64,000 nt of DNA from IMG/VR virus record IMGVR_UViG_3300029993_000005, positions 62,001 through 126,000 of that record. The stretch is one strand, 5' to 3'. Under the pieces are notes generated by a model. It saw only the letters and a list, made by a program, of their open reading frames with translations. It did no database searches and had not been told where the DNA came from. Numbering within the stretch: position 1 is the stretch's first letter; every line of letters begins with the position of its first letter. Positions 1,620 to 59,869 of this stretch are shown here, one piece after another. A program made the translations under genes and the position numbers.

Positions 1620-1627
1620 TATTTACT
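1620..1627 (-). promoter_or_regulatory. AGTAAATA box (candidate phage late promoter)
   Basis: TATTTACT on +, about 28 nt upstream of the 996..1592 start. Confidence 0.55.
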
Positions 1628-2932: not shown

Positions 2933-2940
2933 TATTTACT
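2933..2940 (-). promoter_or_regulatory. AGTAAATA box
   Basis: TATTTACT on +, at head of the minus-strand gene run. Confidence 0.55.
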
Positions 2941-3197: not shown

Positions 3198-3365
3198 AGT
3201 CGAATAACAGCGGAAAAACAGCCAAAAACGCAAAAATACCCAATGATAGATTACCCTTAAACCCCAATCTATCCCCCACCCCACTCCAGCCAATAATGGA
3301 GAATAACCCCCCAAGTCTAGAGGACTATGAAGTTTAAAGTCCTTTTATAATAGTTGGCACCATCG

Positions 3366-3397
3366 TCCAAGCGTACATATTTTTAGATCCGCCGTTT
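3366..3397. repeat. 32-bp perfect inverted repeat, left arm
   Basis: tccaagcgtacatatttttagatccgccgttt is the exact reverse complement of 3858-3889. Confidence 0.95.
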
Positions 3398-3778: not shown

Positions 3779-3838
3779 AAAAGTTAATATGGGATTTGTC
3801 TATAGAATAGATAAAATCTCTGTTTGTATTAACTGTAG
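3779..3838. repeat. ~60-bp imperfect direct repeat, copy 2
   Basis: matches 2981-3040; ends in an AGTAAATA box (3837-3844). Confidence 0.85.
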
Positions 3839-3857
3839 TAAATATAGGGTGTAGTGA

Positions 3858-5990: not shown

Positions 5991-5998
5991 AGTAAATA
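5991..5998 (+). promoter_or_regulatory. AGTAAATA box
   Basis: intergenic, upstream of 6089. Confidence 0.55.
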
Positions 5999-8842: not shown

Positions 8843-8872
8843 TTGGCACCAACTGCAAAATAGGTATATAGT
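8843..8872 (+). promoter_or_regulatory. sigma70-like early promoter (TTGGCA ... TATAGT)
   Basis: intergenic; -35-like TTGGCA with 16-18 nt spacer; similar element at 9149. Confidence 0.5.
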
Positions 8873-9148: not shown

Positions 9149-9177
9149 TTGGCACCATCGTTAAGTTGAGCTATACT
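9149..9177 (+). promoter_or_regulatory. sigma70-like early promoter TTGGCA-N17-TATACT
   Basis: near-consensus boxes, 17-nt spacer, intergenic. Confidence 0.7.
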
Positions 9178-11573: not shown

Positions 11574-12111
11574 TATCAAGGTGAATTACGATCTTAATTT
11601 GGTATTCCAGAAGAGCACTCCAAAAGAGCTCCGGTCCTCTATTTATGACTCATTTGCATTGGCATTGGAGCCAACTATTGGTAAATCAACTGGTATAGCA
11701 GAACGAACCTCAACAGTTGAGACTTGCACTACTTATCTTGATTCCTTGATTGAGCAGAAACAACTCGTGGGATACAACGTTGTCCCTGGCGAAATCTATA
11801 GGGTGACGAGGACTAGGCTCACGAAACACAACCAAGTGCAGGAACTACGTACTGAGCTTTCTACAGGGGCCCTTAGCTGGCACCCAGTCGATGACTGGGT
11901 CCTGGGCCTGGAGACTTGGCGTCAAGGTCCTCACAAACCACGACGTAAACTAAGACAGGCAGCCCGTTGTCTTGTGGGCAGAACCCATCATCCAATGAAT
12001 GTTTGGTTCACCCTCGTACAGCCCGTGAACCACATTATGCTGACAATCCAGGCTGAACCTGATGTACTAACCAGTAAATACAAAGACATAGTTTTCGAAC
12101 GTGACTATTGA
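11566..12111 (+). CDS. protein resembling tail-sheath C-terminal domain
   Basis: FALALEPTIG...TTYLDSLIEQKQLVGYNVV...NVWFTLVQPVNHIMLTI resembles sheath C-terminal pattern. Confidence 0.4.
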   Translation: MSDIKVNYDLNLVFQKSTPKELRSSIYDSFALALEPTIGKSTGIAERTSTVETCTTYLDSLIEQKQLVGYNVVPGEIYRVTRTRLTKHNQVQELRTELSTGALSWHPVDDWVLGLETWRQGPHKPRRKLRQAARCLVGRTHHPMNVWFTLVQPVNHIMLTIQAEPDVLTSKYKDIVFERDY

Positions 12112-12758
12112 GGACACCTTCTATGCCTGCCCCAAATAAAAAGAAAAACATTATCGCTAATTTCGTGGACCACCGTGTCTACGTCGATACCTACCGCAAG
12201 AACGTGGTACGGGTTCTACGCAACATTCAAAAAGGATCAGTTGTTGAAGACGATTTGAATAAACTCTTGAATTTCTGCCAAATGTCACTGGCGTTGCTCG
12301 AAGTAGTAAATATAGATCACATACGTCAAGCCTGGACTAATGCAGAACTCATGTCATTCATGCACCCGGAAGCCGAAGACCTAGAAGTGGTGTTGGATCC
12401 CAAGTTGCAACTGCGAACAGTTGATGACGAGTTCACACGCGTAGGTGCTCTATCATCTGGTTACGAGCGTAAGGTTGGGACCCTAGCCTCAGAAATGTTG
12501 GGACTAAAGATTAGAGATACTATGGCTGGGAATGCTCATAACCTACCGGAGCTCCAACGCATGATTGACCATGTTAAGACCTTGAACATAAAATCTGTAA
12601 TCCAAGATCATGTGGTAGAAGGTGAGAAGACAAAACTAACGTTGTTTGCCTTGGGTGTAGACTACCCGCGGCGTTTGGTCGCAATCTCGGATGATAGGTT
12701 TGGTATCTTCTGTAGTCGGGATACCGCTCAGTATATTCTTGATACTTATAAGGAATAA
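12108..12758 (+). CDS. hypothetical protein
   Basis: 216 aa, overlap-coupled. Confidence 0.65.
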   Translation: MRTPSMPAPNKKKNIIANFVDHRVYVDTYRKNVVRVLRNIQKGSVVEDDLNKLLNFCQMSLALLEVVNIDHIRQAWTNAELMSFMHPEAEDLEVVLDPKLQLRTVDDEFTRVGALSSGYERKVGTLASEMLGLKIRDTMAGNAHNLPELQRMIDHVKTLNIKSVIQDHVVEGEKTKLTLFALGVDYPRRLVAISDDRFGIFCSRDTAQYILDTYKE

Positions 12759-25965: not shown

Positions 25966-25973
25966 AGTAAATA
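25966..25973 (+). promoter_or_regulatory. AGTAAATA box
   Basis: intergenic, upstream of paralog array. Confidence 0.55.
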
Positions 25974-29911: not shown

Positions 29912-29919
29912 AGTAAATA
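29912..29919 (+). promoter_or_regulatory. AGTAAATA box upstream of tRNA pair
   Basis: 11 nt before the tRNA 5' end. Confidence 0.6.
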
Positions 29920-29930
29920 CAATGCAGTAA

Positions 29931-30007
29931 GGGCCGGTGGCGCAATTGGTTAGCGCGGAGAATTCATAATTCTAAGGTTGTCGGTTCAAGTCCGGCTCGG
30001 CCCACCA
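29931..30007 (+). tRNA. tRNA with CAT anticodon, probably Ile2 (lysidine) rather than Met
   Basis: full cloverleaf, 7-bp acceptor GGGCCGG/TCGGCCC, TTCAAGT T-loop, encoded CCA; C4:G69 and C5:G68 pairs as in bacterial tRNA-Ile2. Confidence 0.9.
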
Positions 30008-30563: not shown

Positions 30564-30597
30564 TGTTCAATTTTATAGCATAACCTTAGATCGTCAT

Positions 30598-30605
30598 AGT
30601 AAATA
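30598..30605 (+). promoter_or_regulatory. AGTAAATA box
   Basis: intergenic, upstream of glycosyltransferase pair. Confidence 0.55.
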
Positions 30606-30640
30606 AAGGGTGGGACCGTGATAGGTCCCACCCTTTTCTT
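30605..30640 (+). terminator. intrinsic terminator
   Basis: 13-bp perfect stem aaagggtgggacc/ggtcccacccttt followed by T-run. Confidence 0.8.
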
Positions 30641-30661
30641 TTGTTACCTGAGGAATAAATC

Positions 30662-33255: not shown

Positions 33256-33263
33256 AGTAAATA
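33256..33263 (+). promoter_or_regulatory. AGTAAATA box
   Basis: intergenic, 6 nt before ATG 33270. Confidence 0.5.
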
Positions 33264-36407: not shown

Positions 36408-36773
36408 ATGAAGCACTGGAAAGAATGGATTGGCTGTGATTTCGATGGCACTTTATGTGTGTACGATAAATGGCGGGGACCAACTCACGCTGGTGCACCT
36501 ATTCCAAAGATGGTGAAGCGAATACAAAAATTGATTGCCGAGGGCAAAACCGTAAAAATTTTCACCGCCCGTGTAGGTAAGCTGGAAAATGACACCGATG
36601 AGTCCGTAGAAGAGGCCCGCAAGTTTGTATCAGACTGGACCTTGAAGCACATAGGGACCCGTCTTGAGGTCACGAATATTAAAGACCAAGGTATGACACT
36701 TTTGTACGATGACCGAGCAATCCAAGTTTTGAAAAACACAGGCCGCATTGTTGTAGTGAAAGACAAACAGTAA
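36408..36773 (+). CDS. HAD-superfamily hydrolase
   Basis: CDFDGTL, IFTAR, LYDDRA. Confidence 0.8.
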   Translation: MKHWKEWIGCDFDGTLCVYDKWRGPTHAGAPIPKMVKRIQKLIAEGKTVKIFTARVGKLENDTDESVEEARKFVSDWTLKHIGTRLEVTNIKDQGMTLLYDDRAIQVLKNTGRIVVVKDKQ

Positions 36774-36776
36774 ATA
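36769..36776 (+). promoter_or_regulatory. AGTAAATA box upstream of DNA polymerase
   Basis: overlaps the upstream stop, 28 nt before ATG 36805. Confidence 0.5.
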
Positions 36777-40420: not shown

Positions 40421-41152
40421 ATGTTTTCCCACGTCTACGGGGAGCTAGTGGTTGCCGCTAGTTCTCCAGCTACTAGTTTCAAAATTTTTGATGATCCCAA
40501 CACAAGATCCGGTGACCACAGTGGACATTCGGATCACAGTCTTTTGTTCAATACAAAATTCAAGACTTTGGCCCGTGGACTATCCGTGGTCAGCCAAAAT
40601 GTAGCATTGCCTCAACGAAACAAATACATGGTACTCGATTGTCTAGCGAATTCTAGTGAGGCCGCACTAACTACTTGTACTGAACTGGCCGTTGGCCTGA
40701 CCTCACTGGATACGAAATTTGAAAATAGTCGTCAGCTCTACAAGGTTCATCAATTAATGCTAGACGTGGGCACAAAAACTTCCGACTTCGTGGCCGTCAT
40801 CAACAATGAAAGCGAACACTGCAATTTCAATCTGTTGGCCTTCGGTGGACTAGAACTTGAAGTCTTCGGTATTTATGACGTAGTAAATAAGAGTATAAGA
40901 CTGATGTGGACTACGGACTCGTCTTTTGTTTCTAAAATAAAGTCTGAGGACTCAACACGCTACATATTTTATCGATTCCCTACGCTCCGTAATCGACCCT
41001 TGTTTATTCACACGCAGTACGTGGTATCCAAACTCTACAAGTGGTCATTGGTCTTTGACGGACGTGATAGTGTATTAAAGTTGTTCAACGCTCTAGAAAA
41101 TTTCTTGTATGGAAATCCTAATCAGCCAGAATGGATTCCAGTTTCTAAGTGA
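40421..41152 (+). CDS. hypothetical protein
   Basis: agaggttc RBS shared with polymerase gene. Confidence 0.65.
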   Translation: MFSHVYGELVVAASSPATSFKIFDDPNTRSGDHSGHSDHSLLFNTKFKTLARGLSVVSQNVALPQRNKYMVLDCLANSSEAALTTCTELAVGLTSLDTKFENSRQLYKVHQLMLDVGTKTSDFVAVINNESEHCNFNLLAFGGLELEVFGIYDVVNKSIRLMWTTDSSFVSKIKSEDSTRYIFYRFPTLRNRPLFIHTQYVVSKLYKWSLVFDGRDSVLKLFNALENFLYGNPNQPEWIPVSK

Positions 41153-41164
41153 AGGCGGCCATCC

Positions 41165-42199
41165 ATGAATGACGCGCTTAGACTTAGCACTCGGTCCCAG
41201 TTTATATCATCCCAGCTAGCATCTTACAGCGGACCTAAGAGGGAACAGGGTGATCGTCTGTTCATCAGCTGTCCATTTCATAGTGAACGAACGCCTAGCG
41301 GCAAAGTTGATCGTGAACGTGGGACCTTCTATTGTTTTGGCTGTGGTGCTAAGTGCTCTTGGGACGAACTGGCGGCCAAGATTGGGCTTCAACCCTTTAT
41401 CAAAGGTAAGCCCAAGGATGAGACATCAACCGATTTGTTCATGCAGAAAGCACTGGCTCTGTTAAAAAATGAACAACCTTTTGTTCAAGATCGTTTACGT
41501 TTCACAGCCATACCCAAGAACAAGGTTTGGCGCTCAATATCCACCAATCTGTTGATTGATCTTGGTGGTCGCTTGTGTATCAAATATAGTAAAGAGTATG
41601 AACGCTGGGGCTCCACCAAATTCATACATTTTCCCGTCATAGTAAATAAAGAACAGTGCGGTTATTTCTTGGCCAGACTAAAGAAGCATCCGGACTATCC
41701 ATCATATATGTTGGCATCAGCGTCAGTTAATCAAAAATGGGTCTTAAGCCGTGGCTTATGGCCTTTTGACTATTCGTTGGAGCTAATGAAGAACCTAGGT
41801 TCAACGTCCATGGTGCTGGTCGAGGGTCAAAGAGATGCCTTACGTTTAATTCTTTCAGGAATCCCCGCACTCTGTATTTTTGGCACCCAAAGTTGGTCGG
41901 ATAAAAAGGCACAACTACTGGAGGTTGCGGGAGTAACCAAACTCATAATCCTCATGGATGGTGACGATGCTGGAATTAAGGCATCCGAAAAAATAAAAGA
42001 TCGAGCCTCGTCTTTGCTGAATGTCGCTGAGATCAAACTCTGGAACATCAAGGGCAGTCCCTACTTAGAATTCGAGGACCTAGCCGAACCTAGTAAGACC
42101 GCAAAACTAAAAGGTGTGGAACTGTGGGACCCTTGTAACGCGCCGCAATGGATAATTGACAAATTGAAATTTAAATACTTTCACAAATTTAGGGAGTAA
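41165..42199 (+). CDS. DnaG-like primase
   Basis: CPFH...FYCFGC zinc finger, TOPRIM LVEGQRDA and MDGDDAG. Confidence 0.9.
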   Translation: MNDALRLSTRSQFISSQLASYSGPKREQGDRLFISCPFHSERTPSGKVDRERGTFYCFGCGAKCSWDELAAKIGLQPFIKGKPKDETSTDLFMQKALALLKNEQPFVQDRLRFTAIPKNKVWRSISTNLLIDLGGRLCIKYSKEYERWGSTKFIHFPVIVNKEQCGYFLARLKKHPDYPSYMLASASVNQKWVLSRGLWPFDYSLELMKNLGSTSMVLVEGQRDALRLILSGIPALCIFGTQSWSDKKAQLLEVAGVTKLIILMDGDDAGIKASEKIKDRASSLLNVAEIKLWNIKGSPYLEFEDLAEPSKTAKLKGVELWDPCNAPQWIIDKLKFKYFHKFRE

Positions 42200-43052: not shown

Positions 43053-43060
43053 AGTAAATA
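43053..43060 (+). promoter_or_regulatory. AGTAAATA box
   Basis: intergenic; context ctctagtaaata identical to the 2933 copy. Confidence 0.55.
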
Positions 43061-44430: not shown

Positions 44431-44438
44431 AGTAAATA
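44431..44438 (+). promoter_or_regulatory. AGTAAATA box
   Basis: intergenic. Confidence 0.5.
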
Positions 44439-44454
44439 AGGCTTATACAAGCCG

Positions 44455-44495
44455 AAAAGCCCGGTACCTGTATTTTGGTCCGGGCTTTTATTTTA
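44455..44495 (+). terminator. intrinsic terminator
   Basis: aaaagcccgg...ccgggctttt followed by atttt. Confidence 0.65.
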
Positions 44496-44529
44496 TCTAA
44501 AACGAATATTTCAAACTCCAGGATTACTT

Positions 44530-46965: not shown

Positions 46966-47352
46966 ATGCATTACAAAAATAAAGACGTGCCATTGGCTAC
47001 CCCACGTTTAGACTTCACCACGCTAGAGGATTTTGAACTTTTAGCAAGCTGTGCCCCCGCCAACATACAGGCCTTGCATATTTTGGTGGACGCCTCTACC
47101 TATGCAATCCTGTGTGATCAAATCGAGGACTTCAAGTATCTCAGGTTCACTCAAGCTGGATTTAAGACCCCGATTCCACATGATGGTTATGTTTGCTACG
47201 TAGCTAATGCTCTGGTGTTCACCGATGCCTGGCTACCAGTAAATAAACAGTGGGTGAACGACAATGGACAGGCCGGACGTCCTCAATTCTTGATTGTGCC
47301 CGAAGAGAATTTCAAACCATATATTCCGAAACCAAAACAACACGGTGACTGA
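46966..47352 (+). CDS. hypothetical protein
   Basis: start refined to ATG 46966. Confidence 0.55.
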   Translation: MHYKNKDVPLATPRLDFTTLEDFELLASCAPANIQALHILVDASTYAILCDQIEDFKYLRFTQAGFKTPIPHDGYVCYVANALVFTDAWLPVNKQWVNDNGQAGRPQFLIVPEENFKPYIPKPKQHGD

Positions 47353-47565: not shown

Positions 47566-48693
47566 ATGTTTGATAAGAACTACGATTGGTACGTCGTTGG
47601 ATCAGGATTTACTGGTGCTTCATTCGCTAGGGCGCGTGCTGATAAAGGTGACAGAGTGCTCGTGGTTGAACAACGCAACCACATCGGCGGTAATGCTTAC
47701 GACTATTGGGAAAATGGACAACTACTAGCCAAGTATGGACCTCACTTGTTTCACACGAATTCACAAAAAGTAGTGGATTTTCTTTCACGATTCACCAACT
47801 GGCGTCCCTACGAGCACCGAGTAGCGGTCGAGGTCGACGGACAGTCTATACCGTTACCCATCAATTATAATTCACTTGAACAGTGGTTTGGAACCGAGGG
47901 TTCTGCTGAAATACTTATGGACCTGCGTGACCACTATGGTTTCGACAAGACAGTAAATATACTGCAGCTCCGTGAGGACAACAAGACAAAGCTCCTTGAA
48001 GCAGTTGCTGACCTTATTTATAAGAAAGTGTTCGAACCTTATAGCCGAAAGCAGTGGGGCTCGCATTTCGAAAATCTAGATTCTTCGGTTATGGGTCGGG
48101 TGCCTATTCGGTTGAATCGAGATGACCGATATTTCACAGACAGTTTTCAAATGATGCCTACTGACGGCTACACCACAATGTTTGAGAACATGCTTAGTCA
48201 TCCTAACATTCAGATTTTGCTGAACGCTGATTACAACGATCTCATGTCTGGACCCCAGCCAGTTCCTGTTTTCTATACGGGTTCGATTGATGAGTATTTC
48301 AATTACAAACTTGGTATCCTTCCCTACAGAACCTTAGACTTCGCCAACGTGACAAGTGAATACTATAAGCAGAGCATAGCTACTATGAACATGCCTCAGC
48401 ATATGCTTTATACACGGGCCACGAACCAGACATTGGTCAACGGGTATAAAGGACAGCCTCAAGTTATTACCTTTGAGTCCGCACGTGAATTTGAACTTGG
48501 TACTTCAGATATTCGATATTACCCGGTACCCACGTCCGAGACACAAAATTTGTATAAAGACTACGATAAATATGCTGAGACCTATCTCAAGGGTTGCACA
48601 CCCGTGCATTTCGCCGGACGTTTGGGTAGCTATCAATACTTGAATATGGATCAGGCCTGTGCTCAAGGTCTACAGCGGGCAGCTACACTATGA
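47566..48693 (+). CDS. glf: UDP-galactopyranose mutase
   Basis: VVGSGFTG, EQRNHIGGNAYD, YGPHLFHTN, RDDRYFTD, PYRTLDF, RYYP, GRLGSYQYLNMDQA. Confidence 0.95.
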   Translation: MFDKNYDWYVVGSGFTGASFARARADKGDRVLVVEQRNHIGGNAYDYWENGQLLAKYGPHLFHTNSQKVVDFLSRFTNWRPYEHRVAVEVDGQSIPLPINYNSLEQWFGTEGSAEILMDLRDHYGFDKTVNILQLREDNKTKLLEAVADLIYKKVFEPYSRKQWGSHFENLDSSVMGRVPIRLNRDDRYFTDSFQMMPTDGYTTMFENMLSHPNIQILLNADYNDLMSGPQPVPVFYTGSIDEYFNYKLGILPYRTLDFANVTSEYYKQSIATMNMPQHMLYTRATNQTLVNGYKGQPQVITFESAREFELGTSDIRYYPVPTSETQNLYKDYDKYAETYLKGCTPVHFAGRLGSYQYLNMDQACAQGLQRAATL

Positions 48694-48872
48694 CTACTAT
48701 TATGAAAGTTCGTCGATTTTCCGGGCGTTCTGAAGAACTATGCACTTTTATCAATAGTCGCCACATGTCTGAAGCTGTGGTGAGCATATCCGTAGTAGCT
48801 AGACTTAGAGATGGAGCTCCTTGGACTTATGATATTTTCTACAAAGAAGAACAAAGTGAGTTTGCCCCATGA
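48690..48872 (+). CDS. hypothetical protein
   Basis: 60 aa, overlap-coupled. Confidence 0.5.
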   Translation: MTTIMKVRRFSGRSEELCTFINSRHMSEAVVSISVVARLRDGAPWTYDIFYKEEQSEFAP

Positions 48873-49762
48873 TCATAAGCCAGGCACACAAATTCGCGTT
48901 TATTCATAATCCAAAGGTGGCTGGTACGTCTGTACGCAAGGCTATTGCCAGCTACCATGATTATCCAGAGCGCTTCTGGCACCAGGGATTCTTGGAGGAG
49001 CATAATCGTGTAGTGGACTTAGCACATATCCCTTACAGGGACCTGGATGCACGCATAAAGACTGCGTTATCCAAGTGCTTCGTCTTTGGGTTTGTTAGGC
49101 ACCCAGTGTTAAGATTTTGGGCCTCTTTAGCAGAGTTCCGTAGGCAGCATGCTGATTGGAACGTTGCTAAGCTAAGTGCTGACGAGCTATTGAATACTTG
49201 GTTGACACCAGCCAACATTCGTTACGACTGGCGGTTTACGCATTTCTGCCCTCAGCATTACTTCTTCTACGAGGGCAACAAGTGCAAGGCCGATTACATT
49301 GGTCGACACGAGGACTTCAAACGCTCGTGGTCCAATGTTCAAAAATTAATTGGCTTGGACCTCGATCCTTTGGACAACAATCGAAGTCGGGGATATCTAG
49401 AACCAGAGGCTCTGGAACCAGCCTCTTACGCACACATACAACGCCTGTACATGAAAGACACGCTGCTCTTTGGTTACGAGCGTTGGGACACTAGTTGCGA
49501 TGCCATTGCTGAAGACGGAAGGCCAAGTCCTCAGTGTCAACCAATTCCCAATACGCATGAACATCGTGTGGAACTTATCCATGTCCCTTATTTGGATGCC
49601 AGCACGCTAGCCGATCTACCTTTGGGCGAACGTGTAGCCTTTCTCGAAACAAGGGTTCGTCAGTACGAACGTGAGTTCAAGCTCAGAAATAAACACCAAG
49701 AAGCTCAAGAAATAGGTGATAAACAATTTTCTTTACCCGATGAACAAGTTCAAGATATATAA
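48869..49762 (+). CDS. sulfotransferase family 2-like protein
   Basis: FIHNPKVAGTS (5'-PSB), FVRHPVLRFWAS (3'-PB), HFCPQH, YIGRHED. Confidence 0.8.
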   Translation: MIISQAHKFAFIHNPKVAGTSVRKAIASYHDYPERFWHQGFLEEHNRVVDLAHIPYRDLDARIKTALSKCFVFGFVRHPVLRFWASLAEFRRQHADWNVAKLSADELLNTWLTPANIRYDWRFTHFCPQHYFFYEGNKCKADYIGRHEDFKRSWSNVQKLIGLDLDPLDNNRSRGYLEPEALEPASYAHIQRLYMKDTLLFGYERWDTSCDAIAEDGRPSPQCQPIPNTHEHRVELIHVPYLDASTLADLPLGERVAFLETRVRQYEREFKLRNKHQEAQEIGDKQFSLPDEQVQDI

Positions 49763-50332: not shown

Positions 50333-50898
50333 ATAAAGTCATGTTTGGAGACTTTAGCGCTCTGACCTCCAGAGTAACCCCTGATTTGAATCCTCCACCA
50401 CTAAGTCCTAGCCCAAACCCAATAATTCTAAGGGAAACAATGATACAGACCCTAACGTTCGAAGACTCAACTATCCCTGATACTGATTTTGAGGCAATGT
50501 TTCAACTCGCTAAAGATCGTATTGACTTGTGTAAGAAGAAAAATGAGGAGTACGGGAGTAGTTGGTGTAAGCGTGGTGGGGCCGGTGCTTTCTTCAGTGT
50601 GATACGTAAAACAGACAGACTGGAGACTCAGGCTAGGAATAGAAACTACGATCTGTTTAATGTTGACGAGGACCCGAATAGCACAGAGTCTCTGGACGAA
50701 ACCCTGCTCGATACTGTTGCTTACTATCTTTTGATTCTTGAAAAGAGACAGGCTAAGCGTCAAATGATGGCCAATCTAATTGAACAGTTCCAAGCAGCCG
50801 ATACATACCCTATCGGAGCCTCTGTTACGAATTCAAGTAACCATCAAACTAATACGTTTGATATTAGCTATAACAACGGTATCAAAGATGACAGTTAA
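50326..50898 (+). CDS. DUF1599 / nucleotide-modification-associated domain 1-like protein
   Basis: KKKNEEYGSSW...RKTDRL...ESLDETLLDTVAYYLL. Confidence 0.65.
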   Translation: MVNKVMFGDFSALTSRVTPDLNPPPLSPSPNPIILRETMIQTLTFEDSTIPDTDFEAMFQLAKDRIDLCKKKNEEYGSSWCKRGGAGAFFSVIRKTDRLETQARNRNYDLFNVDEDPNSTESLDETLLDTVAYYLLILEKRQAKRQMMANLIEQFQAADTYPIGASVTNSSNHQTNTFDISYNNGIKDDS

Positions 50899-51355
50899 TC
50901 CTCACATAATTATTTGTGACATTGACGGTGTCTGTGTTGATGCTGATCACAGACTACCGTATCTTATGTCCGGAGACAGAGAATCTTATATCAAGGCCGC
51001 TGTTGATGATAAACCCCTAACCCCAGGCTGTGTCATATACAGAAAGTTTTTGAACGATAAGAACTACAAACTATTGTTCGTCACCAGTCGTAAAGACGTT
51101 CTCAATTATCGTCAAGTCACGTTGAATCAAATTCGCAATTTTGTCAGTCAAGAAATCGAGGACTGGCAACTTTTAATGCGTCCAGCAGATTCTGATTTCT
51201 ATACCGTACCTGACGCCGTACTGAAGCCCCTATTAGTAGAAGAACTGGGCATCAAGATCGAGGACATTTTTCTTGTGTTCGAGGACCGTGATTCGACGGT
51301 TAAGGCTTGGCGTGATCTAGGCTGCATAGTTTATCAAACAGCTAGCTGGGATTAA
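50888..51355 (+). CDS. T4 PNK 3'-phosphatase-like HAD protein
   Basis: CDIDG, FVTSR, LLMRP, DAVLK, VFEDRDSTVKAWRDLG; start refined to ATG 50888. Confidence 0.8.
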   Translation: MTVNPHIIICDIDGVCVDADHRLPYLMSGDRESYIKAAVDDKPLTPGCVIYRKFLNDKNYKLLFVTSRKDVLNYRQVTLNQIRNFVSQEIEDWQLLMRPADSDFYTVPDAVLKPLLVEELGIKIEDIFLVFEDRDSTVKAWRDLGCIVYQTASWD

Positions 51356-51411
51356 CCACGAAACTCAATAATCTCCGGTGCTTAATTTTATAATCTATAC
51401 CGGAGAACTGC

Positions 51412-52032
51412 ATGTTAACTCTATCCCAGATAATTAAGAAAACAGGGCCTCTCCGAATTGAAGGCTCCAAGTACGTGGTTATTACAGGTATGAAGAAGGG
51501 GTTTGACAGCTTGGGCCGTCCCTTTGTTGCAGGTGCTAGTTACACCACACATATCATTGGTCCCTATGGAAAGCCCATAGTAAATAAGATAAGACACCGA
51601 TATGTAACGGTCATCACGTTCTTGGACCGTCAACTGAATGTGCTCGTATCCTGTTCTTGTGACGATGCTCAGTACCGAACGGAATATGCACTGCATAGCA
51701 AAGGTGCTGCAGAAATCGAGTACTCGAATGGGGAATATCCATCACACACGAATCCAAAATTAATTCCCTATTGTTGCAAGCACGTATTAGGTCTCTACAA
51801 CAAGATCAAGAGCCAGCTTCCGCAGCCAGCAGGCAAACCGAGAATTACCTTGAAGACTAATCCAGCACAACCTACGGTCTCACCAGTTAAACCACATATT
51901 AAACTCAAACCAGCACCAACCACTGCTCCAGTACCCAGTCCGGTTAAGCCTCATGTCAAGCTCAAGACAGCACCAACTATTCCAACGTCTACACCACCGC
52001 CGAAACCTCGCATCACGCTCAAGTCTAAATAA
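51412..52032 (+). CDS. SWIM zinc-finger protein with Pro/Lys-rich repeat tail
   Basis: VSCSCDD...CCKHV; KPRITLK/KPHIKLK/KPHVKLK/KPRITLK repeats. Confidence 0.65.
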   Translation: MLTLSQIIKKTGPLRIEGSKYVVITGMKKGFDSLGRPFVAGASYTTHIIGPYGKPIVNKIRHRYVTVITFLDRQLNVLVSCSCDDAQYRTEYALHSKGAAEIEYSNGEYPSHTNPKLIPYCCKHVLGLYNKIKSQLPQPAGKPRITLKTNPAQPTVSPVKPHIKLKPAPTTAPVPSPVKPHVKLKTAPTIPTSTPPPKPRITLKSK

Positions 52033-52063
52033 ACTTTAAACCCTTAATTTAGGTGTACTGATC

Positions 52064-52249
52064 ATGATACGAAGAGAAGCGAAATTTGAAGGTGGTCCTT
52101 TAGACGGGAAAGTACTGACGCTCTACATCGGACAGGTTTCCAAACCGGCACCCGTCTACTCCACGTTCCTAGGTGGCTTAGAACATGAGTACAAGCCAAA
52201 GACAGCTAAGGGCCTTGAATATCTCTATCTAGGTCCGCGCAAAACTTAG
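52064..52249 (+). CDS. hypothetical protein
   Basis: GGPLDG motif, AGGT RBS. Confidence 0.55.
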   Translation: MIRREAKFEGGPLDGKVLTLYIGQVSKPAPVYSTFLGGLEHEYKPKTAKGLEYLYLGPRKT

Positions 52250-52263
52250 ACTAGGGATTCTCA

Positions 52264-53241
52264 ATGAGCACCAGAAATTACGAGCATAGCCATACCTTCG
52301 ACGTAATGAAAAACGTCAATGAACAGGTGGTGGGTAATCTGACTAGTCTTCAGTATCTGCAGACCCTAGATCTATTTCTGTGGAATGCACTGACACCTAT
52401 TCACGCTGAATGCCCATCCTTGTTCAACAATTATTTGGCCAAGATAGTTGCCCACCAATCGATTAACGCCAGCACCAAGTTCACTAGCGATGATCGATCC
52501 AAGTTAGCTATTCACTTGTTCAATGTTCTATCTAATCCTGATCCGAAAAAAGCCCACGAACAGGCACGTTTGATGTACATCAATAGAGGCTTGCTTTTCG
52601 GGTTCTTGGCCCTGTTTTTGAAGAAACTTAGGCGCTACGAAAAACTGCATTCTCCGTTCCTTAGCCTAGACCCAGTGGTCAGAAATTCAGAAATTCATCA
52701 AATAGAAAGAAGTGTGGGGCTCAGGCCAAACAGCTCTCTCTACGCGGTCATTCAGCAAGTTAGACACTGGCATGAAAAGGCTTTGTGGTGGAAGGGTGTG
52801 ATCCTAGAAAAGTACACGAGGATGACGCTGCTCCAAGCAAAGTCAGCGTATGAGGATTTCAATCACTACGTGAAGCTTAATGACGTGGTGCAAATCTATT
52901 TGATGGTCCTGAATCGTGCGGTTGACCGTTGTGACGCACGTCAGGGTGTGCTCACCACGTTCATTCAGAACTGGTACAAAAGCGCCCGCTCAGAAATAGC
53001 CGATTTATCAAAGACACAAACCGATGTTAGCTACGAATCAATAGCTGAAGAGCATGGAGATTCGGCATCAGACATTCTAGGTTTTGCGGAACTAGATACG
53101 GGTAGTGAAATGCTGGAGCACATAGCATACACAGCCAAACAGATTGATAAGCATGGCTACGTTAGAGCGCCATTAGGCATTCCTGAGTACGTGACACGAT
53201 CTCAACGTGAGCTCTTAGAGCTATTTATTGTCGAGGACTAG
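52264..53241 (+). CDS. sigma70-family-like transcription factor (region 2 present, region 4 not apparent)
   Basis: LEKYTRMTLLQAK...LNDVVQIYLMVLNRAVDRCDARQGVLTTFIQNWYKSA aligns by eye with sigma70 regions 2.1-2.4. Confidence 0.65.
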   Translation: MSTRNYEHSHTFDVMKNVNEQVVGNLTSLQYLQTLDLFLWNALTPIHAECPSLFNNYLAKIVAHQSINASTKFTSDDRSKLAIHLFNVLSNPDPKKAHEQARLMYINRGLLFGFLALFLKKLRRYEKLHSPFLSLDPVVRNSEIHQIERSVGLRPNSSLYAVIQQVRHWHEKALWWKGVILEKYTRMTLLQAKSAYEDFNHYVKLNDVVQIYLMVLNRAVDRCDARQGVLTTFIQNWYKSARSEIADLSKTQTDVSYESIAEEHGDSASDILGFAELDTGSEMLEHIAYTAKQIDKHGYVRAPLGIPEYVTRSQRELLELFIVED

Positions 53242-53244
53242 TTC

Positions 53245-53601
53245 ATGACCTATTCAAGTTCCAACTCCAGCCGTGAGGCCAGTCTAGAACTGTCTTTGCA
53301 GGCTATGAAGTCCTTGCTCTCAAGCTATGTATTGCGAGCAAAGCAGGCGGAACAAACAGCAGCCCTGTTAATGCAAGAAAAACTAACGGAGGCTCAACTA
53401 GAGGTTCTTCATTCAACAATTCTAGCTCAGTTAGAACAGCATTCGGCAGAGCGTTCAGTGCAACAACAAGCTCTACTGCAAGCCTCGCTAGTTACCCTAA
53501 ACGCAGCAGCAAGCTCACCAGATGAAACATGTAGGACCCTAGTAAATACAATGTTGAAGGACCTAACACTCGCCCTGTCCCACATGAATCCCAGGGCATA
53601 A
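53245..53601 (+). CDS. helical hypothetical protein
   Basis: 118 aa; AGTAAATA box at 53541-53548 near its end. Confidence 0.55.
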   Translation: MTYSSSNSSREASLELSLQAMKSLLSSYVLRAKQAEQTAALLMQEKLTEAQLEVLHSTILAQLEQHSAERSVQQQALLQASLVTLNAAASSPDETCRTLVNTMLKDLTLALSHMNPRA

Positions 53602-53625
53602 ATTTAAACAACAGAGGTTAAGACA

Positions 53626-55164
53626 ATGGCACAACGCGGATCAGATTTCGACTCAGTTAAAACAAATTCACGTCCAGAGAAAAGTCAACCCTCGGACAAG
53701 GTTACGGTTTTCAAATTTCCACCCAAGAAGTGGATTACTTTCAGATGCGCAGGGCCTATCCACAGCTATGCAACAGGCTGGATTAAGACCAAAAAGAAGG
53801 ATGGTAAGTCAGTTAAATTTCCTGTGGTCATGCCTTCCTATGACCCTGAAACTCAACAATTCGATAGCACGATTTACGATCCTTGGTACGGTGTATGGCA
53901 GGGTCAAAAAGATGTGGACCGTGAAGACCAGTTAGTACAACTCAGCACCAAGTATTATACAAACATGATTTGCCGTTCGGTTCAAAAACAAATGCCAGGC
54001 ACTTTGGTCAAGGCGACCTCAGGCGAGCGCAAATCGGGTTTCAAGGACAAGGATAGCGACACGTGGACGCCGTGGGTTGCTGTGAGCCTTCCTGCAGGCG
54101 CAATCGCCAAGATTAAGGACCTGAAGGGTACCAACGTCGTTGAATCAGCTAAGACAGGTAATAGCAAAGCTTATTCGGTAGCTGATGCTAAGTACGGTTG
54201 TGACATCCGTATTATGTATGATCCGGATAAGAGTCCAGCCGAACAATACTCGGTTCAGACAACCAACAAGCGGACACCCATTACCGAAGAAGAGCAAGCG
54301 TTTTTACGCTGGGACACCTCGGACTTGGCAAGTCCTATGACCAAAGAAGAGACCAAGACAGAGTTCGATAACTGGTCCAAGCGTATGGGTATTAAGGTCG
54401 GTAAAAAGGCCAAACCTGAAATTGATGAAGACGAGGACATTGATTCGGATTATGAAGACGACGAACTGGACGATGAGGAGCCTGTAAGCAAGAAGAAAGT
54501 TGCTAAGAAACCAGCGTCTAAGTCCAAGAAGAAAGTTGAAGAGGACGAGGATGAAGATTTTGACGACTCTGAGTCTGAAGACTTTGACGATTCCGATTCA
54601 GACGATGATTCTGACTTTGATGACGAAGAGGAAGACGAACCTGCACCGAAAAAGAAAGTATCAGCAAAACCTGCGGCAAAGGGTAAGAAAAAAGTTGTTG
54701 AGGAAGATGATGAAGACTTCGATGACGATGATTCAGAGGCTGATGACAGCGACGAAGACGACGAGGACTTTGACGATGAACCGGCACCCAAGAAAAAAGC
54801 CCCGGCCAAAAAGCCGGTAGCCAAGGGTAAGAAGAAAGTTGAGGAAGACGAGGACGAAGACTTTGATGACGAGGACGAGTCAGATTCCGATTCAGATGAC
54901 GGTGATGACTCAGACGATGACTTTGATGATGAAGATGATGAGCCTGCACCATCACCAAAGAAGAAGGCTCCCGTCAAGAAACCTGTAGCCAAAACCACGC
55001 CACCAAAGTCAAAACGCAAACCTGTAGTTGAAGATGACGAGGATGAGGACTTTGACGATTCCGATTCAGACGATGATTCTGACTTTGATGACGAAGAGGA
55101 AGACGAGCCCGCACCCCGTCGTAAGGCACCAGCAAAACCTGTTGCTAAGAAGGTCAAGCGTTAA
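53626..55164 (+). CDS. gp32-like single-stranded DNA-binding protein with long acidic/basic repeat tail
   Basis: WITFRCAG, KYYTNMI, GCDIRIMYD, QYSV core; position next to RecA; acidic tail. Confidence 0.6.
   Translation: MAQRGSDFDSVKTNSRPEKSQPSDKVTVFKFPPKKWITFRCAGPIHSYATGWIKTKKKDGKSVKFPVVMPSYDPETQQFDSTIYDPWYGVWQGQKDVDREDQLVQLSTKYYTNMICRSVQKQMPGTLVKATSGERKSGFKDKDSDTWTPWVAVSLPAGAIAKIKDLKGTNVVESAKTGNSKAYSVADAKYGCDIRIMYDPDKSPAEQYSVQTTNKRTPITEEEQAFLRWDTSDLASPMTKEETKTEFDNWSKRMGIKVGKKAKPEIDEDEDIDSDYEDDELDDEEPVSKKKVAKKPASKSKKKVEEDEDEDFDDSESEDFDDSDSDDDSDFDDEEEDEPAPKKKVSAKPAAKGKKKVVEEDDEDFDDDDSEADDSDEDDEDFDDEPAPKKKAPAKKPVAKGKKKVEEDEDEDFDDEDESDSDSDDGDDSDDDFDDEDDEPAPSPKKKAPVKKPVAKTTPPKSKRKPVVEDDEDEDFDDSDSDDDSDFDDEEEDEPAPRRKAPAKPVAKKVKR
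54580..55106. repeat. 59-bp exact direct repeat (54580-54638 and 55048-55106) inside SSB tail
   Basis: gactttgacgattccgattcagacgatgattctgactttgatgacgaagaggaagacga twice. Confidence 0.9.
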
Positions 55165-55197
55165 ACCTGTTAATTAGCAAGTGTGAAGTGCCCTCTG

Positions 55198-55235
55198 GCC
55201 CTGACCTGAACGCAGATTCACGTCGGGGCTTTTTC
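55198..55235 (+). terminator. probable intrinsic terminator after SSB
   Basis: gccctgac...gtcggggc then tttttc. Confidence 0.55.
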
Positions 55236-55257
55236 ATTATTGTCCTCAAGGATAACC

Positions 55258-56754
55258 ATGGTCACACGAACGACAAAGCCCTATCCTAAATCAGCGGCTA
55301 AGAAAACAATTAAAATGGAAAAACCTGAGAAAGATGCTGTTGACGAGGCTATTGAAAAAATCGTAGGCAAGAAAAGTCCTGCCACGTTTGACCCATATGC
55401 TTTATACACCACTACTATTGACGACATCAGCCGTAGACAAGGCGTTGACTCGGATTTGATGGAGGCCATTGTACCTCTGTCAACCGGCAATCTTATGCTG
55501 GACCTAGTCTATGGCGGCGGTATAAAGCCAGCTATGACGACGCATGCCGGTTGGGAGCAGAGCTGTAAGACCACGGGTGCCCTAACCATCATGGCCTCCG
55601 CAATAAAAGCTAAAATTCCACTGGTCTCACTTTGGGATTTCGAGAATTCAACGGGCAACAGTAAAAAATACGTCGCTAATATTTTGCGTACTGCTGGACT
55701 AAAGGTTTCTGTTGACGATGTATTTGGTAAAAAAGACCCAATGACCGGCAAGTGGTTGATTCAGCCTATGGTTCGTTATCACTCGGAGACTATAGGTGAA
55801 AAGTTTTTCAATTGGTTGTCTGAACTTTTGCGTCAGCTTCCAGACAAGAAATATGTAGCCAAGGAATGGTGGCTTGTTTATGAAGACACAAAAATCAATA
55901 AAACAAGACTGGGTGAACATGCTGTAGCTTCTATGTCCAAGAAATATGGAAAAGGGTTATGGGTGAAGGCTCCAGACGGCAACATGCAAGCTCTAATTAT
56001 GGTTGATAGCTATCCAGCGATGAATCCAGAGTCCAACGACGAGGAAGATTCGGATAGGTCTTTGGGACTCCATGCTCGTATGTTTTCGAAACACCTACCC
56101 AGAGTTAAAGGTAGGCTAGCTAAGAAAATGGTAGCGCTTTTGGGTATCAATCAGATGCGCGATATTCCGATGGTTAAGTATGGGCCAAAAGAACAAGAAC
56201 CTTGCGGCAAAGCTTTGCGTTTTAATTCAGATATCCGTATCAAATGGACTGCCCGTTCGTCTGGGATGCCTTTCAATCCTAAATTTGATACTGAAGAACG
56301 TGTTGAATTCGAACGCTCAATAGTCGATGGTGGCAAAGACCGCTATCGCTATATCCAAGTCCATGGTTTCAAGAACAAGCTGGCTAATCCTAATCGTAAG
56401 GCTTGGCTACGCTTATGGGTCGAGGACGCTACCGGAGAGGCTCGTGGTTTCGATCCCTTCTTTGATACTGCGTCATATCTTCGAGAGACTGGTCAGCTTA
56501 CGGGAAAAAGTCGTCAGTCTATGCAGTTGGATATCAATAGCTTGGGTAAAGCAAAGAAACCAATTGACTGGAAAACTCTGAAATTGTGGATCCTGGGTAC
56601 CAAAGAGGATAAGACAAAGATCAGTATTGCACAGGGCTACAAGGCTATGGACTTGAGACTTTTTTGTTTCAAACAGATGGCTAGCGGTGTAGGTGAAACC
56701 TTGTATGTTGCAAAACGACAGGCTGGCAAAGTTGCTGACTCAGAAGACGAATAG
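55258..56754 (+). CDS. recA: RecA/UvsX-like recombinase
   Basis: LSTGNLMLDLVYGGG, GWEQSCKTT, IMVDSY, INQMRD, CGKALRFNSDIRI, KNKL. Confidence 0.85.
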   Translation: MVTRTTKPYPKSAAKKTIKMEKPEKDAVDEAIEKIVGKKSPATFDPYALYTTTIDDISRRQGVDSDLMEAIVPLSTGNLMLDLVYGGGIKPAMTTHAGWEQSCKTTGALTIMASAIKAKIPLVSLWDFENSTGNSKKYVANILRTAGLKVSVDDVFGKKDPMTGKWLIQPMVRYHSETIGEKFFNWLSELLRQLPDKKYVAKEWWLVYEDTKINKTRLGEHAVASMSKKYGKGLWVKAPDGNMQALIMVDSYPAMNPESNDEEDSDRSLGLHARMFSKHLPRVKGRLAKKMVALLGINQMRDIPMVKYGPKEQEPCGKALRFNSDIRIKWTARSSGMPFNPKFDTEERVEFERSIVDGGKDRYRYIQVHGFKNKLANPNRKAWLRLWVEDATGEARGFDPFFDTASYLRETGQLTGKSRQSMQLDINSLGKAKKPIDWKTLKLWILGTKEDKTKISIAQGYKAMDLRLFCFKQMASGVGETLYVAKRQAGKVADSEDE

Positions 56755-59816: not shown

Positions 59817-59869
59817 ACTACTTTTAATTGAGGGCCTGCAATTTTATGGCATATGTAGGAGAATTATAA

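What the first reader, a model, noticed from the sequence alone, without database searches (positions are those of the whole stretch)
52264..53241. Phage sigma factor lacking region 4 plus a single-box AGTAAATA promoter motif
Seen: the protein aligns with sigma70 region 2 and has a short region-3-like segment (DVSYESIAEE) but no evident C-terminal HTH. AGTAAATA sits at or near gene starts at 1620(-), 2933(-), 3837, 5991, 25966, 29912, 30598, 33256, 36769, 43053, 44431 and 53541, always in the sense of the downstream gene. Six more copies are intragenic (12305, 40882, 41641, 47238, 47952, 51579). Established: T4 gp55 lacks region 4 and reads a lone TATAAATA box. Inference: an analogous but distinct sigma/promoter pair that also drives the replication genes.
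Basis: partly seen in the sequence, partly recalled or inferred. Interest (0 to 1): 0.62.

Follow-up and report, generated by a model that had tools for sequence, protein, structure and literature searches.

The report
Phage sigma factor and single-box promoters
A jumbo phage related to Ralstonia phage phiRSL1 encodes a sigma factor that has lost its -35-reading part and carries an 8-base promoter-like box in front of its replication genes; both are real and conserved, but it is not shown that this sigma reads this box.

Summary
Both observations hold. ORF 52264-53241 is the conserved sigma-70-family factor of phiRSL1/BcepSauron-like jumbo phages. Its model matches sigma region 1.2, an insert, and domain 2 (best E. 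coli sigma70 fragment, Z 11.7). Its last 73 residues match neither sigma3 nor sigma4.

AGTAAATA occurs 20 times in the window (2.5 expected) and 47 times in the 230-kb genome. Of those 47, 45 lie in the sense of local genes and 29 are intergenic. It is the most enriched 8-mer upstream of genes. It has no -35 partner and is conserved at orthologous genes in BcepSauron, phiRSL1 and Vibrio phage GR7B. It precedes replication and nucleotide-metabolism genes and a tRNA, so it is a middle-class promoter box.

The pairing of this sigma with this box is not established. The lineage has a second single-box class, cAATTT(T/G)At. That box heads capsid, tail, baseplate and lysis genes, and in about half the lineages the sigma operon itself. 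There is also a second, weakly supported sigma-like gene outside the window, which lies behind AGTAAATA-type boxes. The sigma family was already annotated; the three-class promoter map appears unreported in the searched library.

The parts
52264..53241 (+). sigma-70-family factor (sigma#1), 325 aa
   Evidence: PHROG 17569 E 1e-77; AF2 pLDDT 87; fold matches to sigma domain 2; 173 homologues
52336..52464 (+). residues 25-67: two helices matching sigma region 1.2
   Evidence: VIA-align to 1sig_A and 7ye1_F starts at sigma70 residue 113
52465..52737 (+). residues 68-158: helical insert in the place of the sigma70 non-conserved region
   Evidence: 218 residues aligned to the sigma70 114-448 fragment, Z 11.7. 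hhalign aligns residues 142-241, which reach back into the end of this insert, with sigma70 342-438
52738..53019 (+). residues 159-252: sigma domain 2 (regions 2.1-2.4), with invariant RCD.R.GV.T.F...W.K
53020..53238 (+). residues 253-325: acidic linker plus 3-4 short helices; neither sigma3 nor sigma4
   Evidence: no Pfam r3/r4 hit; folded alone, best PDB match Z 2.1; hhalign to RpoD gives nothing
1620..1627 (-). AGTAAATA box, 27 nt upstream of ORF 996-1592
   Evidence: orthologue in BcepSauron also has the box
2933..2940 (-). AGTAAATA box at the head of the minus-strand gene block, 110 nt upstream of ORF 2223-2822
   Evidence: No strong early-type promoter was found upstream of it (the early-type matches stop at genome 57525), which argues for a promoter rather than an RNA site
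3837..3844 (+). AGTAAATA box upstream of ORF 3901-5967
   Evidence: orthologue in phiRSL1 also has the box
5991..5998 (+). AGTAAATA box, 90 nt upstream of ORF 6089-7183
12073..12080 (+).
25966..25973 (+). AGTAAATA box, 28 nt upstream of ORF 26002-26346
29912..29919 (+). AGTAAATA box, 11 nt upstream of tRNA-Met (29931-30007)
30598..30605 (+). AGTAAATA box, 29 nt after a late-type box and abutting a terminator hairpin; upstream of ORF 30662-31387
33256..33263 (+). AGTAAATA box, 24 nt upstream of ORF 33288-33812
36769..36776 (+). AGTAAATA box, 28 nt upstream of the DNA polymerase gene (36805-39972); its TAA is the stop of the preceding ORF
43053..43060 (+). AGTAAATA box, 65 nt upstream of ORF 43126-44421; box conserved at the orthologues in BcepSauron and phiRSL1
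44431..44438 (+). AGTAAATA box followed by a strong terminator; upstream of the peptidase gene 44530-45555
47238..47245 (+). AGTAAATA box in the 3' end of an ORF, 108 nt upstream of the next gene
53541..53548 (+). AGTAAATA box in the 3' end of ORF 53245-53601, 77 nt upstream of the SSB gene; kept at this place in almost every related locus
12305..12312 (+). intragenic, in-sense AGTAAATA copy (function open)
40882..40889 (+). intragenic, in-sense AGTAAATA copy
41641..41648 (+). intragenic, in-sense AGTAAATA copy
47952..47959 (+). intragenic, in-sense AGTAAATA copy
51579..51586 (+). intragenic, in-sense AGTAAATA copy, 684 nt upstream of the sigma gene
51384..51391 (+). late-type box AATTTTAT, 20 nt upstream of the first gene of the sigma operon, in the loop of an 8-bp inverted repeat
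   Evidence: the same place in BcepSauron (138654) and phiRSL1 (161555)
30569..30576 (+). late-type box AATTTTAT in tandem with the AGTAAATA box at 30598
59840..59847 (+). late-type box AATTTTAT, 22 nt upstream of the Holliday-junction resolvase gene (59870-60502); box also at the phiRSL1 orthologue
3354..3383 (+). early, host sigma70-type promoter (TTGGCA-N18-TATTTT)
8843..8872 (+). early, host sigma70-type promoter (TTGGCA-N18-TATAGT)
9149..9177 (+). early, host sigma70-type promoter (AAAATAATTG-TTGGCA-N17-TATACT-GGAATCAC consensus)
30606..30644 (+). intrinsic terminator hairpin directly after the box at 30598
44455..44496 (+). intrinsic terminator 17 nt after the box at 44431
55198..55234 (+). 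terminator closing the box-SSB transcription unit
   Evidence: read from the sequence
51412..52032 (+). first gene of the sigma operon: 206 aa, weak SWIM-like zinc-finger match, C-terminal KP..LK repeats; conserved next to the sigma as far as phage PaBG (gp120)
53245..53601 (+). 118-aa helical ORF after the sigma; holds the SSB box; function unknown
53626..55164 (+). single-strand DNA-binding protein gene, downstream target of the box at 53541
   Evidence: PHROG 15004 E 1e-71

Best explanation
The ORF is a phage sigma subunit for the host core RNA polymerase. It keeps the promoter-melting module of a primary-type sigma (region 1.2, an insert, domain 2). It has lost domain 3 and the -35-reading domain 4, so it can read only a short -10-like box.

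The phage runs a three-class programme that is conserved in its relatives:
- Early: host sigma70 promoters (TTGGCA-N17-TATACT).
- Middle: the single box AGTAAATA, in front of replication, recombination and nucleotide-metabolism genes and a tRNA.
- Late: the single box cAATTT(T/G)At, in front of head, tail, baseplate, lysis and resolvase genes.

My preferred wiring, which is inferred and not shown: a second sigma-like protein (genome 26319-27269, outside the window) reads AGTAAATA. The sigma of this finding is made from AGTAAATA-driven read-through. It then reads the late box, including the copy in front of its own operon, which gives positive feedback.

Shown: the fold, the absence of region 4, the three motif classes, and their gene sets and conservation. 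Inferred: binding to host core, and which sigma reads which box.
For: Sigma fold and missing region 4.

Three motif classes found without prior assumption in three genomes.

AGTAAATA has no -35 partner. It lies 11 nt before tRNA-Met. It heads a strand block and a lone gene. It is conserved at orthologues (Fisher p 4e-4) and in divergent genomes. Its downstream genes are replication and metabolism genes.

The late box precedes major head, tail tube, tail fibre, holin, baseplate wedge and resolvase genes and also has no -35 partner.

The late box lies 450-950 nt upstream of the sigma gene in about half of 26 lineages. GTAAATA boxes lie further upstream in 21 of 26.

Second sigma-like gene: homologue of PaBG gp112, for which PMC7412058 reports HHpred 97% to sigmaE. 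17 of 30 ESM Atlas look-alikes are Sigma70_r2 clusters. It lies 1.4-4.4 kb behind an in-sense GTAAATA box in most lineages.

Geometry: cAATTT places A and T at the positions of the two flipped bases of a canonical -10 (A-11, T-7). A conserved A then lies 7 nt after that T, where +1 would be (logos; the geometry is my own knowledge of sigma70 promoters). This sigma keeps region 1.2 and aligns F233/W237 with sigma70 Y430/W434.
Against: There is no expression or binding data; no RNA run was listed.

The wiring argument is weak. Neither sigma gene lies behind a clear early promoter, so both wirings need read-through to start.

AGTAAATA shares 6 of 8 bases with the T4 late box read by the sigma4-less gp55, which favours the sigma4-less protein of this finding.

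The second sigma-like gene has no HMMER, Pfam or hhalign support here, and its Atlas structure is poor (pLDDT 0.59).

In Vibrio phage GR7B both sigmas and the GTAAATA box are kept, but a late-type box was not recognisable.
Confidence: 0.4

Rival explanations
1. This sigma4-less sigma reads AGTAAATA, as T4 gp55 reads TATAAATA, and so drives the replication and middle genes. The late box is read by the second sigma-like protein, whose operon lies behind an AGTAAATA box. The late box in front of the sigma operon only keeps the middle sigma supplied late in infection.
For: AGTAAATA equals TATAAATA at positions 3-8, and gp55 is a structural match (Z 6.2). The box has no -35 partner and the protein has no region 4. 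The GTAAATA core and this sigma co-occur in every genome examined, down to 23% identity. The first base of the box differs where the region 2.4 helix differs (A in this genome, T in GR7B). The second sigma's operon is headed by this box in most lineages, as expected if the middle sigma makes the late sigma. In two lineages the box lies 44 nt upstream of the sigma gene itself.
Against: A sigma needed for middle genes should be made early. No early promoter lies near the gene in 26 lineages, and in this genome two strong terminators separate it from the early promoters. The proximal conserved signal is the late box. Co-occurrence does not discriminate, because the second sigma co-occurs too. AGTAAATA cannot be placed on the A-11/T-7 register of a canonical -10 (read from the sequence; own knowledge).
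Confidence: 0.33
2. The two sigma-like proteins act together, or this sigma acts with a cofactor from its own operon (the 206-aa SWIM-like protein or the 118-aa ORF). This would be a split specificity factor, like T4 gp55+gp33 or SPO1 gp33+gp34, and the partner would decide which box is read.
For: The sigma has no flap-binding domain 4 of its own. The SWIM-like gene is kept next to the sigma as far as PaBG. Both sigma-like genes are kept together across the clade.
Against: There is no evidence of contact. The 118-aa ORF may be missing or shorter in some lineages, since the box lies only 134-176 nt after the sigma there.
Confidence: 0.12
3. AGTAAATA acts on RNA (a processing, stability or 3'-UTR signal) rather than as a promoter. 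Its sense bias and intergenic position would follow from that too.
For: Several copies lie between a stop codon and a strong terminator, where a promoter looks futile: window 30598 and 44431; BcepSauron 142271, 189673 and 49892. An RNA signal shows the same strand bias.
Against: Copies head a strand block (window 2933, minus strand) and a lone plus-strand gene in an 86-nt divergent gap (genome 196021), with no strong early-type promoter found upstream. One copy lies 11 nt before a tRNA. The distance to start codons varies from 13 to 141 nt. In GR7B the box follows terminators, in the order expected for a promoter.
Confidence: 0.07
4. The protein is a sigma-derived RNA polymerase binder that does not confer promoter specificity, for example a decoy that displaces host sigma70.
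For: No DNA-binding test exists. Several sigma70 residues of the A-11 pocket are replaced (F419 to C, R423 to Q, Y425 to V, W433 to N; alignment, residue roles from my own knowledge).
Against: The region 2.3-2.4 segment is the most conserved part of the family, with an invariant RCD.R.GV.T.F...W.K. That conservation is expected for DNA recognition and melting.
Confidence: 0.05

Closest known systems
T4 gp55 with the late promoter TATAAATA (structure 7D7D)
   Same: Phage-encoded, with a sigma domain 2 fold (Z 6.2) and no region 4. The promoters are one AT-rich 8-base box without a -35 element. AGTAAATA is identical to the T4 box at positions 3-8.
   Different: There is no sequence relationship (hhalign probability 0.2%), and no gp55-family gene in the genome. 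This protein is 325 aa against 185. It carries region 1.2 and a large insert, like a primary sigma. The AGTAAATA box heads replication genes, not late genes. No gp33 or gp45-type partner was identified; the phage clamp is of the bacterial beta type, and docking of the sigma tail to it got no verdict.
Annotated sigma factors of phiRSL1 (ORF224), BcepSauron (gp240), Motura, BCSR5 (PHROG 17569) and PaBG gp118
   Same: The same family: 47-59% identity, with the same synteny of sigma, small ORF, SSB, RecA and terminase. PaBG gp118 is a distant member (phmmer 2e-18) with published HHpred 99.9% to sigma70 (PMC7412058).
   Different: This is a new, lower-GC (45%) member from a metagenome. In the searched library the published annotations do not mention the missing regions 3 and 4 or any cognate promoter.
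Bacterial primary sigma70 (E. coli RpoD fragment 1SIG)
   Same: Best structural match: Z 11.7 with 218 residues aligned, covering region 1.2, the non-conserved-region position and regions 2.1-2.4. hhalign aligns residues 142-241 with RpoD 342-438.
   Different: It lacks region 1.1, domain 3 and domain 4. Its Pfam region 2 score is far below the family cut-off.
Bacillus phage SPO1 cascade (gp28 for middle, gp33+gp34 for late)
   Same: A cascade of phage sigma-like factors replacing the host sigma for successive gene classes (own knowledge). This is the logic proposed here for two sigma-like genes and two phage-specific classes.
   Different: SPO1 middle and late promoters are two-box (-35 and -10), whereas both classes here are single-box. 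No homology was tested.

Membership tests
sigma-70 family | Domain 2 (regions 2.1-2.4) fold | tested here: met
   24 of the 25 best VIA-align rows are sigma factors, Z up to 11.7; Foldseek top 50 are nearly all sigma70 chains; 26 of 38 homologues hit Sigma70_r2 weakly
sigma-70 family | Pfam Sigma70_r2 above the gathering score | tested here: not met
   13.6 bits against a cut-off of 24; no hit for the protein alone
sigma-70 family | Domain 4 (regions 4.1-4.2 helix-turn-helix, reads -35 and binds the beta flap) | tested here: not met
   No r4 or r4_2 hit in 38 homologues or in six frames of the genome; the C-terminal part folded alone matches nothing above Z 2.1
sigma-70 family | Domain 3 | tested here: not met
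   No Sigma70_r3 hit. Structural matches end at residue about 252. PaBG and GR7B homologues carry an extra segment after region 2.4 that is absent here
sigma-70 family | Binds core RNA polymerase and confers promoter-specific initiation | not testable with these tools
   Needs purified protein and host core enzyme
T4 gp55 family (PHROG 234 / 12791) | Sequence membership | tested here: not met
   hhalign probability 0.2%; no match to phrog_234 or phrog_12791 in the genome at E 10
T4 gp55 family (PHROG 234 / 12791) | C-terminal sliding-clamp-binding tail | tested here: inconclusive
   The tail ..LLELFIVED resembles gp55 ..SLDFLYEAND but decays in divergent homologues and is absent in GR7B. The complex job with the phage beta clamp gave no verdict
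PHROG 17569 (phiRSL1-type phage sigma) | Full-length profile match and synteny | tested here: met
   E 9.7e-78 over residues 22-324; sigma-small ORF-SSB-RecA order as in phiRSL1 and BcepSauron
single-box (-10-only) phage promoter | Enriched, sense-oriented box upstream of genes without a -35 element | tested here: met
single-box (-10-only) phage promoter | Transcription start a few nt downstream | not testable with these tools
   No RNA run was listed. The only indirect support is the tRNA 11 nt downstream

The most novel reading that the evidence does not exclude
A wide clade of jumbo phages (phiRSL1, BcepSauron, Motura, PaBG, Vibrio GR7B and many uncultured ones) runs a conserved cascade with two phage sigma-like factors and two -35-less single-box promoter classes. 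One factor is a primary-type sigma that kept region 1.2 and domain 2 but shed domains 3 and 4. That would be a natural sigma4-less sigma that arose independently of T4 gp55. It would have to hold on to the polymerase, and possibly be activated, through its unusual C-terminal tail or a partner. AGTAAATA boxes placed just before terminators would then mark promoter-proximal termination control.
Probability: 0.3. Interest if true: 0.7.

Novelty: new variant of a known kind. Interest (0 to 1): 0.5.

Why it matters
Phage sigma factors that work without a -35 reader are known in depth only from T4 gp55. A second, independent solution would test which sigma functions are dispensable: flap binding, -35 contact and the sigma3.2 finger. 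This one derives from a primary-type sigma and is conserved from Burkholderia and Ralstonia phages to Vibrio phages.

The three-class promoter map has practical uses. It gives a ready annotation key for gene timing in phiRSL1-like jumbo phages, some of which are biocontrol candidates against Ralstonia and Burkholderia. It also offers short orthogonal promoter/sigma pairs for synthetic biology. The sigma annotation itself is not new.

Tried and rejected
- **Near-identical phage records:** none found.
- **PDB sequence searches:** the single protein and the profile both gave only noise.
- **hhalign against T4 gp55 and E. coli RpoD:** the family profile against gp55 and the C-terminal profile against RpoD gave nothing. 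The similarity I recalled between the C-terminal linker and sigma70 regions 3.2/4.1 is therefore unconfirmed and dropped.
- **A -35 or downstream partner for either box:** none found.
- **Host sigma70-type promoters near the sigma gene:** at chance level.
- **Public RNA runs for window 50800-56700:** none was listed.
- **Co-variation between boxes and sigma residues:** both boxes and both sigma-like genes are conserved together across 38 related loci and four divergent genomes, so this does not discriminate.
- **BcepSauron gp101 ('RNA polymerase'):** no PHROG match and no homologue here, so it was dropped as a conserved factor.
- **A second sigma next to the sigma gene:** Pfam on ten upstream ORFs found none.
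- **The second sigma-like family (A3):** nothing by HMMER against PDB, by Pfam, or by hhalign against the first family. Its support rests on the ESM Atlas and a published HHpred value.
- **Complex prediction, sigma tail (281-325) with a dimer of the phage beta clamp:** no verdict, score 0.01. This is not evidence either way.
- **An early promoter 2 kb upstream of the second sigma in BcepSauron:** it lacks that phage's early consensus, so it was not used.
- **Literature:** the phiRSL1 genome paper (Virology 2010) is not held. No held paper contains the box in a phage context.
Full report
**Source.** The window is bases 62001-126000 of a 230,110-bp virus record, estimated 97% complete, with about 45% G+C. 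The sigma ORF has protein matches in Burkholderia phages BcepSauron and BcepSaruman (59%), Ralstonia phage phiRSL1 (56%), BCSR5 (52%), Achromobacter phage Motura (47%) and, remotely, Vibrio phage GR7B (23%). The gene order sigma, small ORF, SSB, RecA-like, terminase, resolvase, portal is the same as in phiRSL1 and BcepSauron. This is therefore an uncultured, lower-GC member of the phiRSL1-like jumbo phages.

**The protein.** ORF 52264-53241 encodes 325 aa.
- Sequence methods alone are weak. There is no Pfam hit. TIGR02937 gives E 0.059 over residues 189-259. Pfam Sigma70_r2 scores 13.6 bits against a cut-off of 24.
- The family signal is clear. PHROG 17569 'RNA polymerase sigma factor' matches at E 1e-77. 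There are 173 homologues. 26 of 38 aligned homologues hit Sigma70_r2 and none hits r3 or r4.
- The AlphaFold model built on that alignment has pLDDT 87. Foldseek's best rows are nearly all sigma70 chains.
- In the Foldseek-independent search, 24 of the best 25 chains are sigma factors. The best are the E. coli sigma70 fragment 1SIG (Z 11.7, rmsd 3.9, 218 residues, model 25-249 on chain 113-446) and Caulobacter sigma73 (Z 11.4). T4 gp55 (7D7D chain F) scores Z 6.2.

The protein thus has the region 1.2 helices, an insert where sigma70 has its non-conserved region, and domain 2. hhalign aligns residues 142-241 with RpoD 342-438. That alignment puts the invariant F233 and W237 on sigma70 Y430 and W434.

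The most conserved stretch of the family is RCD.R.GVLTTFIQNW.KS, the region 2.3-2.4 position.

After residue 252 no structural match continues. Folded alone, the last 78 residues give 3-4 short helices (pLDDT 81) and match nothing in the PDB above Z 2.1. No Sigma70_r4 or r4_2 signal exists in any frame of the genome. 'No region 4' is therefore confirmed, and domain 3 is missing too.

The protein is not a gp55 relative by sequence.

**The box.**
- AGTAAATA occurs 20 times in the window against 2.5 expected, and 47 times in the genome against 8 for the reversed control.
- 29 of 47 copies touch the 10.5% of the genome that is intergenic (p 3e-17). 45 of 47 lie in the sense of the local genes (p 8e-12).
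- In an unbiased count it is the top 8-mer within 120 nt upstream of genes.
- Single substitutions are hardly used upstream of genes.
- Flanks show only a preferred T before the box and A-rich bases after it. There is no -35 element and no downstream -10.
- Distances to start codons run from 13 to 141 nt.
- One copy ends 11 nt before the mature 5' end of tRNA-Met.
- One copy heads the minus-strand block (window 2933). One is the only signal in the 86-nt divergent gap before a lone plus-strand gene (genome 196021).
- The SSB gene forms a complete unit: box (53541), gene, terminator (55198-55234).

These facts favour a core promoter element over an RNA signal.

**Conservation of the box.**
- BcepSauron (58% G+C) has 21 copies against 0 control. 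phiRSL1 has 17 against 2. In both it is among the top upstream words.
- Orthologous genes share the box more often than chance (own against BcepSauron 6 of 14, Fisher p 4e-4). These include the beta-clamp gene and, seen directly, the SSB gene.
- In 38 related loci the box lies about 300 nt after the sigma stop codon, in front of SSB, almost everywhere.
- Genomes whose sigma is only 38-41% identical keep GTAAATA: 20 against 1, 20 against 0 and 6 against 0.
- In Vibrio phage GR7B the top upstream word is TGTAAATA, often directly after terminators.

**Genes behind the box.**
- This genome: DNA polymerase, SSB, a peptidase, an NMN-adenylyltransferase-like gene, DnaB-like helicase, DNA methylase, a small DNA polymerase-like gene, a large helicase, a homing endonuclease and a tRNA.
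- BcepSauron: SSB, RecA, beta clamp, helicase, exonuclease and deaminase.

- *Early promoters.* There is a class of host-type early promoters with a long consensus, AAAATAATTG-TTGGCA-N17-TATACT-GGAATCAC. They lie in genome 0.4-71 kb (window 3354, 8843, 9149). BcepSauron has its own version, TATTGTTGACGGG.
- *A second single-box class, cAATTT(T/G)At.* In BcepSauron it lies 21-40 nt before tail tube, tail fibre and holin genes and 69 nt before the major head gene. Here it precedes the baseplate wedge, a structural protein and the resolvase. In phiRSL1, 18 of 26 copies of its core AATTTGA lie within 100 nt upstream of genes. It also has no -35 partner. A conserved A lies five bases after the box. 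This is the late class.
- *The late box in front of the sigma operon.* It sits in front of the small operon holding the sigma gene in this genome (51384), in BcepSauron, in phiRSL1 and in about half of 26 lineages. GTAAATA boxes lie further upstream in 21 of 26, and 44 nt upstream in two.
- *Tandem boxes.* Where both boxes occur together the late box always comes first, at a variable distance of 11-30 nt in six cases. They are therefore separate promoters and not one bipartite promoter.
- *A second sigma-like gene.* The PaBG paper notes a weak second sigma-like gene, gp112 (HHpred 97% to sigmaE; PMC7412058). Its homologue exists here at genome 26319-27269, outside the window, and also in BcepSauron, phiRSL1 and GR7B. 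HMMER, Pfam and hhalign give nothing for it. In the ESM Atlas, 17 of 30 feature look-alikes are viral Sigma70_r2 clusters, and several structure rows are sigma factors. It lies 1.4-4.4 kb behind an in-sense GTAAATA box in most of 22 lineages.

**Mechanism.** The firm part is that this is a sigma4-less sigma-family protein in a phage with two conserved -35-less promoter classes.

The open part is the wiring.
- AGTAAATA is close to the T4 late box.
- It co-occurs with this sigma throughout the clade.

Four arguments favour the late-box pairing:
- The proximal conserved signal of the sigma operon is the late box, which would be autoregulation.
- The sigma lies downstream of middle boxes.
- No early promoter reaches it. 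In this genome two strong terminators lie between the early promoters and the gene.
- cAATTT fits the A-11/T-7 register of a canonical -10, with an A where +1 would fall. This suits a sigma that keeps region 1.2.

Neither sigma gene has a clear early promoter, so both wirings need read-through to start.

**Unexplained.** Several AGTAAATA boxes lie between a stop codon and a strong terminator: window 30598 and 44431; BcepSauron 142271, 189673 and 49892. Transcripts starting there would meet the terminator within 50 nt. This may be promoter-proximal termination control, 5' hairpin stabilisation, or insulation from upstream transcription. I could not test these.

**Novelty.** The sigma family is already annotated in RefSeq and PHROGs and discussed for PaBG and for jumbo phages in general (PMC7824862). 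Its loss of domains 3 and 4, the AGTAAATA and cAATTTKAt classes and their conservation were not found in the searched library. The phiRSL1 genome paper could not be read. I rate it a new variant of a known kind.

Noticed in passing
window 3354-3383, 8843-8872, 9149-9177; genome 0.4-57.5 kb minus strand: Highly conserved early promoters of host sigma70 type, with a UP-like AAAATAATTG, TTGGCA-N17-TATACT, and a conserved GGAATCACTGCACTGA leader. Several are near-identical copies.
   Followed up: partly
window 30569, 51384, 59840; genome-wide; BcepSauron and phiRSL1: A second single-box motif, cAATTT(T/G)At, upstream of head, tail, baseplate, lysis and resolvase genes and of the sigma operon. Probably the late promoter class.
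   Followed up: yes
G000 26319-27269 (-), outside the window (L039:6319-7269): A 316-aa protein homologous to PaBG gp112. It is a possible second, ECF-like sigma, conserved in BcepSauron, phiRSL1 and GR7B. Support comes only from ESM Atlas look-alikes and a published HHpred value.
   Followed up: partly
window 30598-30644 and 44431-44496; BcepSauron 142271, 189673, 49892: AGTAAATA boxes immediately followed by strong intrinsic terminators, which is the reverse of the usual terminator-then-promoter order. In GR7B the usual order is seen (GGCTTTTTCATCTTGTAAATA, four copies).
   Followed up: partly
window 51373-51405: The late-type box before the sigma operon lies in the loop of an 8-bp inverted repeat (TCTCCGGT ... 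ACCGGAGA).
   Followed up: no
window 51412-52032: A 206-aa protein with a weak SWIM zinc-finger match and four C-terminal KP(R/H)(I/V)(T/K)LK repeats separated by proline-rich spacers. It is conserved next to the sigma as far as PaBG gp120 and may bind nucleic acid.
   Followed up: no
window 53626-55164: The SSB carries a C-terminal tail of about 250 aa made of alternating acidic (D/E, FDD) and basic (PAPKKK..KGKKKV) repeats. It creates long spurious ORFs on the opposite strand.
   Followed up: no
window 47566-48693 and 48869-49762: UDP-galactopyranose mutase (Pfam E 3e-56) and a sulfotransferase. phiRSL1 has glycosyl- and sulfotransferases in the same neighbourhood. This may be sugar modification of DNA or of the virion.
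   Followed up: no
L090:813-1883 (genome 179813-180883): The phage beta-clamp orthologue (by reciprocal best hit to BcepSauron gp302) has no Pfam DnaN hit. An AGTAAATA-type box (GTAAATA core) lies upstream of it in all three genomes.
   Followed up: partly
PaBG gp118 and GR7B sigma (L091, L116): Distant homologues of the sigma carry an extra 20-30 aa segment (..EYGVAY.VP..) right after region 2.4 that is deleted in the phiRSL1-like group. GR7B lacks the C-terminal ..L..F..E tail.
   Followed up: no
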